Part shown: piece after piece, positions 45,901 through 51,900 of the stretch
Layout: the number at the start of each line of letters is the position of its first letter
How positions within the stretch are numbered: position 1 is the stretch's first letter
NCBI RefSeq assembly: GCF_963853765.1
Contig: NC_088853.1
Span: forward strand, 16,678,001 to 16,742,000
Length of the DNA: 64,000 nucleotides
DNA from: Magallana gigas
Taxonomy: Eukaryota
Direction of reading: 5' to 3'
The notes under the pieces: model-generated
Seen by the model: the letters and a program-made list of their open reading frames with translations, nothing else
Told to the model about the DNA's origin: nothing
Database searches by the model: none
Translations under genes and position numbers: made by a program

Positions 45901-48900
45901 CCAAGGGTGGGGGGGGGGGGTCCTAGGCCTTGTTTTGTTATCTCTACTATGTGAATTTATAAACTTTAAGTTGTGATGGGATGGGGTTATCCCCACTGCT
46001 AGATCTGTGCATAGTTAGTACATGTATACGAATAAGACAAAATACCTGTGAATCCACTTGTACCAAGAGCCAGGTGTGTGATATTGATATCTGGAAAAGA
46101 AAGACTCTGGTGTTTATATCCCTGTGAACATGCAGCATCAAGCTACAATGGTCAGATTCAAACTTGCTGCTGTGACAATTTTGTGAAACTTTTACAGTTT
46201 CTTCTCTCTACTTCTTATCAATTTTTAACTACCGTATGATAAATAAATTCTGCAATAACTCATTTTCTTACTTTTATTATTAACTATTTTCATCACTCTT
46301 ACCTGGGTCATGTTTGACTTTACTCAGATATTGCTTGAACATTTTCTCTCGTCCTTTTAGGTCTGGTCTCTCTACAGATATGTGCATATCCAAACGTCCA
46401 GGTCGTAAAATGGCTCTAAATCAAAAAATTGGAAATGAACTGCGAAGTAAGTCAACCATCCAAATCAGGGTGTAATGGCATTAAATGCATTTTTAATCTT
46501 TTAGCAGATAGCGTTATTTCACCATTGTCAATTATTAGTAATAACTGCCAATCTGCCATCATGCCACTTTTCACTGATTTTGATGAATTTTGGATATGAT
46601 AAGTTTTTAGAAACATGTATGACATTGATTATAAGATAAAATAATGTTGGTTTTATGATTAAATATGCTGGATTTAACAGAGATGAGATTTGACCATTGA
46701 ACAATTTTAATTTGTTAATAATCAGTAGATTTTTTGAAAAAAAAAATAAATAGATTGATTTTTTTAAAAACATTTATATGTAGTAAGTTTTTGAATAAGT
46801 ACAGACTTACGGATCGAGGGCATCTTTTCTGTTTGTGGCTGCGATGAGTATGATTCCATTCATAGACTGGAACCTGTAAAAATTAAACATGCCTTGTTGT
46901 CACAACATTGTCTTCTATCTATCCCAAATCAAAATACATGTACTAAAGAATCAAAGTGTGGGCTAATATTTGTAGGTTATGAATTTTTTTAGAGGTTATT
47001 GGGACCTGGGACCATACTTTCCTGAATTCTGTCATACAGTATTTAGTACATAAATATTATGAAGAAATGACAAGTTTAAAATTTGAGTGGGAATGTTCAT
47101 TCATGGGCAAGTTCACTTCACAAATTCTCAGTCAGTTACTGGTTGATATTTTGGTAAAACTGTAACACATATACACTGTACATGTAAGTTACTTCTACCT
47201 ACCCATCTAGTTCTGTTAGTAGTTGGTTGATACTCTGGTATAAGTACTTACCCATCTAGTTCTGTTAGTAGTTGGTTGATACTCTGGTATAAGTACTTAC
47301 CCATCTAGCTCTGTTAGTAGTTGACTGATACTCTGGTATAAGTACTTACCCGTCTAGCTCTGTTAGTAGTTGGTTGATACTCTGGTATAAGTACTTACCC
47401 ATCTAGCTCTGTTAGTAGTTGGTTGATACTCTGGTATAAGTACTTACCCATCTAGTTCTGTTAGTAGTTGGTTGATACTCTGGTATAAGTACTTACCCGT
47501 CTAGCTCTGTTAGTAGTTGGTTGATACTCTGGTATAAGTACTTACCCATCTAGCTCTGTTAGTAGTTGGTTGATACTCTGGTATAAGTACTTACCCGTCT
47601 AGCTCTGTTAGTAGTTGGTTGATACTCTGGTATAAGTACTTACCCGTCTAGCTCTGTTAGTAGTTGGTTGATACTCTGGTATAAGTACTTACCCGTCTAG
47701 TTCTGTTAGTAGTTGGTTGATACTCTGGTATAAGTACTTACCCATCTAGCTCTGTTAGTAGTTGGTTGATACTCTGGTATAAGTACTTACCCATCTAGTT
47801 CTGTTAGTAGTTGGTTGATACTCTGGTATAAGTACTTACCCATCTAGTTCTGTTAGTAGTTGGTTGATACTCTGGTATAAGTACTTACCCATCTAGCTCT
47901 GTTAGTAGTTGACTGATACTCTGGTATAAGTACTTACCCGTCTAGCTCTGTTAGTAGTTGGTTGATACTCTGGTATAAGTACTTACCCGTCTAGTTCTGT
48001 TAGTAGTTGGTTGATACTCTGGTATAAGTACTTACCCGTCTAGCTCTGTTAGTAGTTGGTTGATACTCTGGTATAAGTACTTACCCATCTAGCTCTGTTA
48101 GTAGTTGGTTGATACTCTGGTATAAGTACTTACCCATCTAGTTCTGTTAGTAGTTGGTTGATACTCTGGTATAAGTACTTACCCGTCTAGTTCTGTTAGT
48201 AGTTGGTTGATACTCTGGTATAAGTACTTACCCGTCTAGCTCTGTTAGTAGTTGGTTGATACTCTGGTATAAGTACTTACCCATCTAGCTCTGTTAGTAG
48301 TTGGTTGATACTCTGGTATAAGTACTTACCCGTCTAGCTCTGTTAGTAGTTGGTTGATACTCTGGTATAAGTACTTACCTGTCTAGCTCTGTTAGTAGTT
48401 GGTTGATACTCTGGTATAAGTACTTACCCGTCTAGTTCTGTTAGTAGTTGGTTGATACTCTGGTATAAGTACTTACCTGTCTAGCTCTGTTAGTAGTTGG
48501 TTGATACTCTGGTATAAGTACTTACCCATCTAGCTCTGTTAGTAGTTGGTTGATACTCTGGTATAAGTACTTACCCATCTAGTTCTGTTAGTAGTTGACT
48601 GATACTCTGGTATAAGTACTTACCCGTCTAGCTCTGTTAGTAGTTGACTGATACTCTGGTATAAGTACTTACCCGTCTAGTTCTGTTAGTAGTTGACTGA
48701 TACTCTGGTATAAGTACTTACCCGTCTAGCTCTGTTAGTAGTTGGTTGATACTCTGGTATAAGTACTTACCCGTCTAGCTCTGTTAGTAGTTGGTTGATA
48801 CTCTGGTATAAGTACTTACCCATCTAGCTCTGTTAGTAGTTGACTGATACTCTGGTATAAGTACTTACCCGTCTAGCTCTGTTAGTAGTTGACTGATACT

Positions 48901-51900
48901 CTGGTATAAGTACTTACCCGTCTAGTTCTGTTAGTAGTTGACTGATACTCTGGTATAAGTACTTACCCGTCTAGTTCTGTTAGTAGTTGGTTGATACTCT
49001 GGTATAAGTACTTACCCGTCTAGCTCTGTTAGTAGTTGGTTGATACTCTGGTATAAGTACTTACCCATCTAGCTCTGTTAGTAGTTGACTGATACTCTGG
49101 TATAAGTACTTACCCGTCTAGCTCTGTTAGTAGTTGGTTGATACTCTGGTATAAGTACTTACCCATCTAGCTCTGTTAGTAGTTGGTTGATACTCTGGTA
49201 TAAGTACTTACCCGTCTAGCTCTGTTAGTAGTTGACTGATACTCTGGTATAAGTACTTACCCGTCTAGCTCTGTTAGTAGTTGACTGATACTCTGGTATA
49301 AGTACTTCCCCGTCTAGCTCTGTTAGTAGTTGACTGATACTCTGGTATAAGTACTTACCCATCTAGCTCTGTTAGTAGTTGACTGATACTCTGGTATAAG
49401 TACTTACCCGTCTAGCTCTGTTAGTAGTTGGTTGATACTCTGGTATAAGTACTTACCCATCTAGCTCTGTTAGTAGTTGGTTGATACTCTGGTATAAGTA
49501 CTTACCCATCTAGCTCTGTTAGTAGTTGGTTGATACTCTGGTATAAGTACTTACCCGTCTAGCTCTGTTAGTAGTTGACTGATACTCTGGTATAAGTACT
49601 TACCCGTCTAGCTCTGTTAGTAGTTGACTGATACTCTGGTATAAGTACTTACCCGTCTAGCTCTGTTAGTAGTTGACTGATACTCTGGTATAAGTACTTA
49701 CCCGTCTAGCTCTGTTAGTAGTTGACTGATACTCTGGTATAAGTACTTACCCGTCTAGCTCTGTTAGTAGTTGGTTGATACTCTGGTAGGCCGCGGGGGT
49801 GGAGTACGGACTCTGGGTCCTGGTGGTGGCCAGGCTGTCTATTTCATCAATGAAGACAATGCAAGGAGCTATATGCCTTGCAGTTTCTGAAGAATAAAAA
49901 CAATCATGATTATCAGAGAAAAAAAGTAGACATAATTTTGTTTATTCACAATATTGTGAAACCACCTCAACTTTGTATTTAAATTCCCAATGAGTAATGA
50001 AATATCACTGAATAAAGTCTTTTTGAAAATGAACATAAAACTAAACCCACAAAGCTTAGAAATCCTTACCAAAAAGTTCTCTTACTCGCTTGGCACCCAC
50101 GCCGACAAAGATTTCATCAAACTCGGAGCCCGAGGCAAAAATGAAGGGCACTCCAGCTTCTCCTAAATAAAAGTTATGCTTTCATGAGCGTAAGCATCTC
50201 AACTGTCAACTAAGTATTCATATGTTCTTTTAATTTTAAAATACAAACAACATTAATAAAATTTATTTCACAAAAGTTTCTTCAGATATATGCAAATTTC
50301 TTATTAAAACAAAACAAAATATCAAAAGGAAAGGAAACTAAAAAAAAAATCTTTTAGACAATAAAAATACTTTCAGTAACAAAGACCCAAAACCTGACTG
50401 CTTTAACAGTTGTACAATAATCTTTGTACCTGCCACTGCCCTGGCTAACATGGTTTTTCCAACTCCAGGGGGACCTTCCAACAGGATCCCTACAATACAG
50501 AAAAAATCTTGATGTAGATAATAACTACCAGTAACCATGACCTGTATAGTGACCTAAGACCTAGATTTGACCTTGACATGTAAAACGATCCTAATATGTG
50601 TAGAGACCTTGACTTATCTATTGACTTACTGGTAGATTTGATTTGCACAATGGCCATGACAGGCACAATGACCTTCACCTTACCTTTAGGAATCTTGGCT
50701 CCCACTTGGTTGAATGGCTCGGGGTTCTGCAGGAATTTGACGATATCAATCATGTCATCCTTGGCCTCATCCATCTAAAAATGATACATTTTATAATTTG
50801 TAAATTTGGATGAATGTACAGTGGATCCAGCTCCTTGCTGTAAACCTACATAATAACACTATTATAATACAGTAAAACACACTTATAACAAAGTGCCAGG
50901 GATGGATGATTTTGCTTCGTTGTAAGCATAATTCATCATATCTGTCAAGTTTACGACAAGTAATAAAGTCAAGGGGAATGAAAACCACTTCGCTATAAAC
51001 GTCAATTCTGCTATAACTGTGTTTTACTGTCTTTTCTATGACAAGATATTATCATACTTAGAATTTATATCTTAGAGACCATATTCTGTAATGCAGACAT
51101 GTAAATGTATAGAATTCAGTACGTTAAAATATCATTTATTTAATTTTCAGTTTTCAACAAAAAAAATGAAATGAAATTATATATTTGTTGTTACAGTGAG
51201 AATTCATGTGTACATGAAAGAGAATTCTTTCCTGTGATTCAAACATGTTTCTCATTAACCCCCCCCCCCAAAAAAAAAAAAAAATTACTCATATAATACA
51301 AGTATTAAATTCTGCAATTTCACAATAATATTGATTTAAAAATCCAAGATTTTTAATTTCATTAGAGGTGCTTTCTTGCGATTTTCCTTTGATGATGTAT
51401 TAATCCTTCACTTTTAATCAGGAATACAATACTTACTCCGTGGACATCGCTGAATTTTTCCTCGATCATATCCTTGGACACCACCGAGAATGTTTTGGAG
51501 TTGCCGTTCATAACATCTGTTAAAGAATTAACATACGGTTACAGCTAGCATAAGTGGTTTGTCTCTTTTCTCTGTTAAGTTTCTTTAAAGTTAAAAAACC
51601 TCCTCAGAATATTGAGTTAAATTGAGTCCTCTTTTTAAAAGTGCATTAAAAATAAAAGCCTTTAGGTAAAATACCTGCATACAACATCGCGGTTTAGTTA
51701 AACTTAAAGTTTTAATTATTTTTGGCCTAGTTTTTAGTCCAACATAAATCAAACTTACGTCTCTAGTTTCAGAAAACATGTGAGTAAGGTTAAGATAATT
51801 TTTTTGCTTTAAAAACAACCTACTTGATCCTGTGATCCTAACAATGATGATGACCAGAAGGATAACTGCGGCGACGTAACTCAGGAGCTGGACGGCGTGA

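What the first reader, a model, noticed from the sequence alone, without database searches (positions are those of the whole stretch)
47201..49788. Minisatellite made of a gene's own exon end and splice donor: 52 decoy 5' splice sites behind the real one
Seen: the unit encodes [13 protein letters not shown], the conserved post-Walker-B helix of the AAA domain, followed by GTAAGT. Reading past the first donor gives GAC GGG TAA, an immediate in-frame stop, so any downstream donor yields a premature stop. Units vary at a few sites: GAT/GAC, GAA/GAG, AAC/AGT, two AG|GTAAGT variants (~48378 and ~48476), one broken donor (~49307), and GTAGGT in the last copy. Inference: either the proximal site wins by co-transcriptional exon definition, or this VNTR acts as a length-tunable poison-splicing rheostat or U1 snRNP sink for paralogue A.
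Basis: partly seen in the sequence, partly recalled or inferred. Interest (0 to 1): 0.76.

Follow-up and report, generated by a model that had tools for sequence, protein, structure and literature searches.

The report
Splice-donor minisatellite in oyster YME1L intron
An intron of an oyster mitochondrial-protease gene begins with 53 tandem copies of the end of its own exon plus the splice signal; the mRNA on hand is spliced from the first copy only, so this is one more example of a repeat type already known from human F7/CBS/IFI6 and amphioxus "mirages".

Summary
There are 53 in-register 49-bp units on the minus strand (47192-49788). Unit 1 is the true end of the Walker-B exon of a YME1L-like (AAA + M41) gene plus its GTAAGT donor.

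Of the 52 later donors, 50 keep GTAAGT. Two of those are perfect CAG|GTAAGT. One donor is destroyed and the last is GTAGGT.

An RNA contig runs from the unique exon sequence through exactly one unit into the next exon, 2.9 kb away, so the stable mRNA uses the first donor. No RNA contig covers a unit-unit junction.

An independent DNA run of the same organism shows about 45-57x depth on the unit, so the array is not an assembly artefact. A related organism shows only about 4x.

Orthologous contigs from other samples carry decayed arrays at the same junction with other periods, in 5 and in 2 copies.

The literature already describes this kind of repeat: the F7 IVS7 VNTR with "oriented scanning", CBS, IFI6 and amphioxus mirages. 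This scan has noted such arrays at several other loci of this genome.

The rheostat / U1-sink reading has no support here, but it is not excluded, because NMD could hide decoy products. Verdict: real, ordinary for this genome, a new member of a known kind.

The parts
49751..49886 (-). Walker-B exon (136 nt) of the YME1L-like gene; its last 38 nt are the exon part of repeat unit 1
   Evidence: RNA contig X16 record 9 piece 49886-49749 and joint 49886/50070; Pfam AAA E 2.4e-8; own-frame peptide
49740..49788 (-). Unit 1: 38 nt of exon plus 11 nt of intron; the authentic donor CGG|GTAAGT has its GT at 49750-49749
   Evidence: the RNA contig leaves the genome here
47192..49739 (-). 52 further 49-bp units inside the intron: 50 with GTAAGT, 1 broken, 1 GTAGGT
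48471..48479 (-). Decoy donor with the perfect 9/9 consensus CAG|GTAAGT (a CpG transition of CGG)
48373..48381 (-). Second decoy donor with the perfect 9/9 consensus
49299..49347 (-). Unit whose donor is destroyed (GGAAGT; G for T at 49308)
47192..47240 (-). Last unit, with donor GTAGGT and a diverged 3' end; GTAGGT is also the authentic donor of the orthologous contigs L003/L004
46874..47191 (-). Unique 318-nt remainder of the intron, with the acceptor (pyrimidine run, then CAG) ending at 46874; its start (ACATGTACAGTGTA) is conserved in L003/L004 and in organism B
46811..46873 (-). Next exon ([20 protein letters not shown]), joined to unit 1 in the mRNA
   Evidence: X16 loose letters equal 46842-46871
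50430..50491 (-). Walker-A exon (GPPGVGKT)
50070..50162 (-). Exon between Walker A and Walker B
   Evidence: joints; peptide
46303..46415 (-). Exon with the arginine-finger region (AILRPGR...)
44499..45181 (-). Two exons of the M41 protease domain, including HEAGH
   Evidence: Pfam PF01434; best solved structure is yeast YME1 6az0

Best explanation
This is an intronic minisatellite. It arose when a 49-bp piece spanning the exon/intron border of a YME1L-like i-AAA protease gene was duplicated in tandem and then expanded to 53 copies by slippage or unequal exchange. Because the piece includes the donor, the intron now starts with the real donor followed by 52 copies of it. The spliceosome uses the most upstream copy, the one that ends a normal 136-nt exon, and removes the other 52 units with the rest of the 2877-nt intron. 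The mRNA and protein are therefore unchanged. The extra units evolve as unconstrained, rapidly turning-over intron DNA. Shown here: the array, its copy number in independent DNA, first-donor mRNA, and differences in copy number and period among relatives. Inferred: the slippage origin, why the first donor wins (exon definition or 5'-to-3' 'oriented scanning' as shown for human F7), and near-neutrality.
For: The array is in perfect register and unit 1 is continuous with the exon. RNA contig X16 record 9 runs from unique exon sequence through one unit into the next exon at 46873. No RNA contig lies on 49690-49748. Six RNA runs from three studies hold 0.20-0.23 of the words, which fits exons only. 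DNA run X9 comes from another individual, since it has indels at 49935 and 49995. Its summed depth on the units is 5043-6538 against 114.5 on the flank, about 45-57 times. DNA run X13 (organism B) has 43-73 against 16.9, about 4 times, and a contig that joins a unit to the unique 3' part of the intron. Only three common variable sites exist. One is a CpG. Another changes the invariant Asn of the NQLL motif to Ser in 17 decoy units but not in unit 1. The orthologous contigs L003 and L004 carry 5 and 2 decayed copies of the same exon end plus GT, spaced 73-90 nt apart. L002 has a 23-nt exon piece again 100 nt into the intron. Published precedent: in the F7 IVS7 37-bp VNTR the first unit spans the boundary, only the most upstream donor is used, and pseudo-sites with up to 91% consensus do not compete (PMC1557585). 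Amphioxus mirages do not disturb splicing (PMC3087553).
Against: The RNA evidence is thin: one assembled contig and five raw reads. Contigs drop rare isoforms, and products of downstream donors carry a stop and could be removed by NMD, so 'only the first donor' is shown for stable RNA only. I did not lay reads on the array itself, so there is no direct donor-to-acceptor joint table. Summed contig depth is a rough proxy for copy number. Two decoys are perfect 9/9 donors; in F7 minigenes such sites could draw some splicing. The CBS VNTR has been linked to enzyme activity (the title of Lievers 2001, as cited in PMC2630376), so an effect of copy number cannot be dismissed.
Confidence: 0.8

Rival explanations
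1. Regulatory VNTR. The 50-odd extra donors bind U1 and either divert part of the transcripts into stop-containing, NMD-degraded products or slow or detain removal of the intron. Array length would then tune the output of this YME1L paralogue.
For: 50 intact donors, equal to or stronger than the real one, include two perfect 9/9 sites. Every decoy product would carry TAA right after the Gly codon. The decoys lie closer to the acceptor than the real donor does (330-2800 nt against 2877 nt). Perfect-consensus pseudo-sites drew some splicing in F7 minigenes. The CBS junction VNTR has been associated with reduced enzyme activity (reference title).
Against: No RNA contig or read covers a unit-unit junction. 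The RNA runs hold only the exon share of the words. Copy number differs about tenfold between close relatives, and both period and copy number differ in orthologues, which does not look like a maintained device. The units accumulate a change at an invariant residue and CpG decay. Folding gives no special structure.
Confidence: 0.1
2. The array reflects a mutational process aimed at splice junctions, for example breaks or slippage linked to transcription or splicing at donors, rather than random slippage that merely happens to be tolerated there.
For: The same exon end has been copied into the following intron in at least three homologous genes or lineages. The periods differ (49; 73-90; 100 nt) and so do the start points in the exon. 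Earlier notes of this scan report many such arrays in this genome and a donor excess; I did not check those claims.
Against: In this window it is the only donor duplication among all GTRAGT sites, and no other junction of this gene has one. One array on a donor among about 17 arrays in 64 kb is not significant by itself. Shared ancestry of an old array that later changed period could imitate recurrence.
Confidence: 0.3
3. Assembly artefact: the array is over-extended or invented by the assembler.
For: Long perfect tandem arrays are prone to assembly error, and the exact number 53 rests on one assembly.
Against: An independent DNA run with its own indels nearby shows about 45-57 times the flank depth on the unit. 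Unit-unit junction contigs are present in two DNA runs.
Confidence: 0.03
4. Recursive splicing. The two ACAG|GTAAGT units act as ratchet points: the first donor splices to that AG and regenerates the same donor, so the intron is removed in steps.
For: Two units juxtapose AG with GTAAGT, and each has the perfect branch-site consensus TACTAAC 12 nt upstream. The final mRNA would be identical to the one observed.
Against: There is no pyrimidine tract before those AGs. The change is a plain CpG transition. A 2.9-kb intron does not need recursion. No intermediates were seen.
Confidence: 0.02

Closest known systems
Human F7 intron 7 37-bp VNTR (Borensztajn et al. 2006, PMC1557585)
   Same: The first unit spans the exon/intron border. 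Identical donors are repeated behind the real one. Only the most upstream donor is used in normal mRNA. The array is length-variable.
   Different: F7 has 5-9 units holding 4 exon nt each. Here there are 53 units holding 38 exon nt each, the donor is a near-consensus GTAAGT rather than a weak GTGGGT, and the animal is a mollusc. Function of the pseudo-sites has not been tested here.
Human CBS 31-bp VNTR c.1444_1467+7(16_21) and IFI6 (6-16) 12-nt donor minisatellite
   Same: The units consist of the exon end plus the first intron bases (24+7 nt in CBS). There are 16-21 copies in CBS and 26 in IFI6. They are polymorphic.
   Different: [quoted passage not shown] The CBS copy number has been linked to enzyme activity; nothing like that is known here.
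[quoted passage not shown]
   Same: They are minisatellite-like duplications of exon/intron borders in an invertebrate. They do not disturb normal splicing. Copy number differs between haplotypes, and boundary units escape homogenisation, as the last unit does here.
   Different: Mirage units are 10-160 bp in a few copies and occur at both donors and acceptors. This array is far longer and more uniform (96% matches, no indels).
Other splice-donor minisatellites noted by this scan in the same genome (OvoA, LPGAT1, THOC2, PICH, a GPCR and others)
   Same: The anatomy is the same (exon end plus donor, tens of copies), and those notes give the same verdict of first-donor mRNA.
   Different: The host gene differs. 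Here I add a depth-based copy number in a second individual and in a related organism, and decayed arrays at the same junction in orthologous contigs.

Membership tests
Exon-end / splice-donor minisatellite (F7 IVS7 type; 'mirage') | Tandem array whose first unit spans the exon/intron boundary | tested here: met
   Unit 1 (49788-49740) is continuous with the unique exon sequence, and the exon end is fixed by an RNA contig
Exon-end / splice-donor minisatellite (F7 IVS7 type; 'mirage') | The donor sequence is reiterated in the following units | tested here: met
   51 of 53 units have GTAAGT, including unit 1; one is GTAGGT and one is broken
Exon-end / splice-donor minisatellite (F7 IVS7 type; 'mirage') | Normal mRNA is spliced from the most upstream donor | tested here: met
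   One RNA contig (depth 36.5) holds a single unit and then the next exon; there is no RNA on the unit-unit junction. Sensitivity is limited.
Exon-end / splice-donor minisatellite (F7 IVS7 type; 'mirage') | Copy number is variable between individuals or haplotypes | tested here: inconclusive
   A second individual has about 45-57 times flank depth, similar to the 53 assembled units. A related organism has about 4 times. The orthologous contigs L003 and L004 have 5 and 2 copies. No within-species genotyping of this array was done.
Exon-end / splice-donor minisatellite (F7 IVS7 type; 'mirage') | Pseudo-sites are functional when the first site is disabled | not testable with these tools
   This needs minigene mutagenesis
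Poison-splicing (AS-NMD) or decoy-splice-site regulation | A detectable isoform uses a decoy donor or retains the intron | tested here: inconclusive
   None was seen in RNA contigs or in 5 raw reads, but contigs drop rare forms and NMD would hide them
Poison-splicing (AS-NMD) or decoy-splice-site regulation | The regulatory element is conserved among relatives | tested here: not met
   Copy number is about 50 against about 4 in a close relative, and the orthologues have another period and decayed units
Recursive splice site (ratchet point) | A pyrimidine tract plus AG directly abutting GTAAGT | tested here: not met
   AG|GTAAGT occurs in 2 units only and is preceded by purine-rich sequence
YME1/YME1L i-AAA protease (host gene) | AAA domain followed by a Peptidase_M41 domain with HExxH | tested here: met
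   PF00004 on the Walker-B exon and PF01434 on three exons; HEAGH in the ORF at 44918-45181. Exons were searched one by one; the joined model was not searched.
YME1/YME1L i-AAA protease (host gene) | Closer to YME1 than to m-AAA or FtsH | tested here: met
   For two exons the best solved structure is yeast YME1 6az0, followed by the human i-AAA ATPase domain 5ubv. The short AAA exons alone do not discriminate.

The most novel reading that the evidence does not exclude
The same YME1L exon/donor junction has grown tandem arrays of different period in several lineages (49 nt here, 73-90 nt and 100 nt in homologous contigs). This could mean that oysters have a duplication process aimed at 5' splice sites, linked to transcription or splicing. 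It could also mean that the resulting arrays, here 50 strong U1 sites including two perfect ones, tune the output of the host gene by copy number.
Probability: 0.12. Interest if true: 0.65.

Novelty: new member of a known kind. Interest (0 to 1): 0.3.

Why it matters
This array on its own adds another example to a class described since the 1980s-2000s in human genes and in amphioxus. Its value is as a natural experiment. Fifty-three identical strong donors sit in a row, two of them stronger than the real one, and the stable mRNA is still made from the first. That extends the 'most upstream site wins' rule from mammalian F7 to a mollusc, at ten times the copy number. Together with the other arrays this scan has noted in the same genome, and with the decayed arrays at the same junction in orthologues, it supports a genome-wide study of why oyster exon/donor borders duplicate so readily and how much intron length this creates. 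I found no paper on this in oysters.

Tried and rejected
- **Structure masking of the decoys.** Every donor sits in a 10-nt palindrome (TAAGTACTTA) and could pair with its neighbours. However, the exon plus four units folds no better than shuffles (z 0.29 as RNA), and three units as DNA give z -0.60. Rejected.
- **Known RNA families.** No Rfam match in 46000-51000.
- **Other junction duplications.** None at any GTRAGT site in the window, and no other near-tandem repeat at a junction of this gene.
- **Unit-unit junction in JGI metagenome contigs.** 0 hits.
- **Full-length orthologues for intron comparison.** The one library-wide protein search, made with the N-terminal exon, gave only fragments. 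L001 is a 904-bp contig that does not reach the intron. P0010 (451 aa), in the cluster of P0007, is an unrelated membrane protein and so a false lead. P0009, P0011 and the antisense ORF of the exon are not on record.
- **Reads on the array.** I laid 49690-50600 (exons plus two units) and used the loose end instead.
- **Subfamily from short exons.** PDB searches with the short AAA exons cannot tell YME1 from VCP or AFG2.
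Full report
**What is there.**
- Tandem Repeats Finder reports one array at 47196-49788: period 49, 52.9 copies, 96% matches, no indels, score 4675.
- On the minus strand, cut in 49s from 49788, there are 53 units in perfect register.
- Each unit has 38 nt that read [12 protein letters not shown] plus two bases of a Gly codon, then GTAAGTACTTA.
- Unit 1 continues directly from unique coding sequence holding the Walker-B motif (IVFIDEID).
- The 38-nt exon part occurs 52 times at 3 or fewer mismatches, against 0 in shuffles, and nowhere else in the window.
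- Of the 52 extra donors, 50 keep GTAAGT, one is GTAGGT (the last unit) and one is destroyed.
- The 9-mers are CGG|GTAAGT in 29 units (including the real one), TGG|GTAAGT in 20 and the perfect CAG|GTAAGT in 2.
- The in-frame TAA follows automatically from a GTAAGT donor in a phase-2 intron.

**Host gene.**
- The gene lies on the minus strand.
- The Walker-B exon hits Pfam AAA (E 2.4e-8). Three downstream exons hit Peptidase_M41. An HEAGH zinc motif is present.
- For two exons the best solved structure is yeast YME1 (6az0), followed by the human i-AAA ATPase domain (5ubv).
- The short AAA exons alone hit VCP/AFG2 equally well.
- I call the gene YME1L-like.
- Exons were searched one by one, by reference.
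- A second paralogue lies head to head on the plus strand from about 62.7 kb and runs off the window, so its matching intron could not be seen.

**Intron anatomy.**
- The RNA-defined exons are 50491-50430, 50162-50070, 49886-49751, 46873-46811 and 46415-46303.
- The array intron runs 49750-46874 and is 2877 nt long. Of this, 2548 nt are the 52 extra units. Without them the intron would be about 329 nt.
- Each unit also happens to carry TACTAAC (the LLT codons), and its donor sits in a 10-nt palindrome.
- Folding gives nothing beyond shuffled controls. There is no Rfam match.

**RNA.**
I laid 49690-50600, which holds three exons plus two units.
- In RNA run X16 one 482-nt contig (depth 36.5) joins the three exons with CT..AC (that is, GT..AG on the minus strand) introns. 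It matches through unit 1 to 49749 and then continues with letters identical to window 46842-46871, the next exon.
- The two bases at the cut fit both sides, so the joint is 49751|46873.
- The stable mRNA therefore holds exactly one unit, which means the first donor is used.
- No RNA contig lies on 49690-49748.
- The raw-read run X22 gave only five reads, all on exons and with the strand expected for a minus-strand gene.
- Six RNA runs from three studies hold 0.20-0.23 of the sampled words. My count for exon-internal 31-mers alone is about 0.23 (201 of 871).
- This shows presence of the first-donor form. It does not show absence of rare or NMD-degraded forms.

**DNA support and variation.**
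- Run X9 has the same organism label but its own indels at 49935 and 49995, so it is another individual. Its summed contig depth on the units is 5043-6538, against 114.5 on the unique flank. That is about 45-57 times, in line with the 53 assembled copies.
- Run X13 (organism B, about 1% diverged) has 43-73 against 16.9, about 4 copies. It has a unit-unit junction contig, and a contig joining a unit to the unique 3' intron sequence found at 47173-47189.
- These depths are rough, and the tool itself warns that they are not copy numbers. The tenfold contrast is nevertheless clear.

**Inside the array.**
- Only three sites vary commonly: a linked double change AAC/AGT (36:17), GAG/GAA (39:14) and the CpG site GAC/GAT (32:21). 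All eight combinations are present, which points to exchange between units or recurrent CpG mutation.
- The two perfect-consensus donors are the same CpG mutated on the other strand.
- AGT replaces the Asn of the NQLL motif. That Asn is invariant in VCP, yeast YME1 and the homologous contigs.
- Seventeen decoy units carry the AGT change, but unit 1 does not. The decoys therefore evolve without coding constraint.

**Relatives.**
- A protein search with the exon found three ORF fragments from metagenome assemblies that all end in NQLLTELDG followed by a stop.
- Their contigs come from other species: exon nucleotide identity to the window is about 73-87%.
- L003 has five decayed copies (63-81% alike, spacing 73-90 nt) of the same exon end plus GT.
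- L004 is about 96% identical to L003 but has only two copies. It then resumes at a motif (ACATGTACAGTGTA) that also follows the array in the window and in organism B. These are therefore orthologous introns.
- L002 has a 23-nt exon piece (21 of 23 identical) again 100 nt downstream in the intron.
- The authentic donor in L003 and L004 is GTAGGT, as in the window's last unit. That unit may thus keep the older state rather than being decayed.
- So this junction has been duplicated repeatedly, or has carried a turning-over array for a long time, with different periods.

**Literature.**
- Borensztajn et al. 2006 (PMC1557585) describe the human F7 IVS7 37-bp VNTR. Its first unit spans the exon 7/IVS7 boundary.
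- In F7 only the most upstream of 5-9 identical donors is used. [quoted passage not shown] The authors propose a 5'-to-3' oriented scanning.
- The same paper lists IFI6 (25 pseudo-sites, the first two used), CBS, LMNB2 and PDGF.
- The CBS VNTR is written c.1444_1467+7(16_21). A cited title links it to reduced enzyme activity (PMC2630376).
- Amphioxus 'mirages' are tandem duplications of exon/intron boundaries that do not disturb splicing and vary between haplotypes (PMC3087553).
- I found no paper describing this in oysters.

**Earlier notes of this scan.**
- Notes on other pieces of the same genome report the same kind of array in many genes, call the animal the Pacific oyster, and name the same precedents.
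- I used them as leads. I read the papers myself and tested the 'first copy' and 'same exon end in other oysters' claims for this locus only.
- The only organism evidence I have is the run label 'oyster metagenome'.

**Verdict.**
The rheostat / U1-sink alternative is unsupported but not excluded.
- The feature is a new member of a known kind and is common in this genome. Interest is modest.

Noticed in passing
window 62300-64000 (+): A second YME1L-like paralogue lies head to head with the host gene. Its transmembrane exon and the following exons are about 45-70% identical in protein to paralogue A. It runs off the window before its Walker-B exon, so I could not see whether it has an array too.
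   Followed up: partly
L003:337-691 and L004:415-628: Orthologous contigs from two other samples carry 5 and 2 decayed copies of the same exon end plus GT, spaced 73-90 nt apart. This is a copy-number difference at the same junction in another species. Their real donor is GTAGGT, like the last unit of the window's array.
   Followed up: yes
L002:1623-1745: In a third homologous contig, a 23-nt piece of the exon (21/23 identical) recurs 100 nt downstream inside the intron. The preceding intron is a CT microsatellite that a gene caller read through in frame.
   Followed up: partly
window 47192-49788 (-), every unit: Each unit holds TACTAAC, the perfect branch-site consensus (from the Leu-Leu-Thr codons), and its donor lies in a 10-nt palindrome, TAAGTACTTA. 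Neither gives measurable extra folding.
   Followed up: yes
window 54218-55262 (+): A tandem array of 166 bp x 6.2 (92% matches) lies between the two paralogues. Its units carry an open frame that repeats a peptide (…[21 protein letters not shown]…). It looks like a tandemly amplified piece of a dispersed element.
   Followed up: no
window 52068-52142 and 53040-53114 (-); 55566-55646: Dispersed repeats lie around the 5' part of the host gene. Two copies give near-identical ORF starts ([12 protein letters not shown]…). Window 55566-55646 is 90% identical to part of contig L001 from another oyster sample.
   Followed up: no
protein cluster of P0007: A 451-aa membrane protein with no likeness to the AAA fragment (P0010) is filed in the same 90% cluster as the 54-aa AAA fragment. 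This looks like a clustering artefact, so cluster membership of very short fragments should not be trusted.
   Followed up: yes
window 62881-63025: A GA microsatellite of about 74 repeats lies directly after the transmembrane exon of paralogue B. There is also a 41-nt G run at 36897-36937.
   Followed up: no
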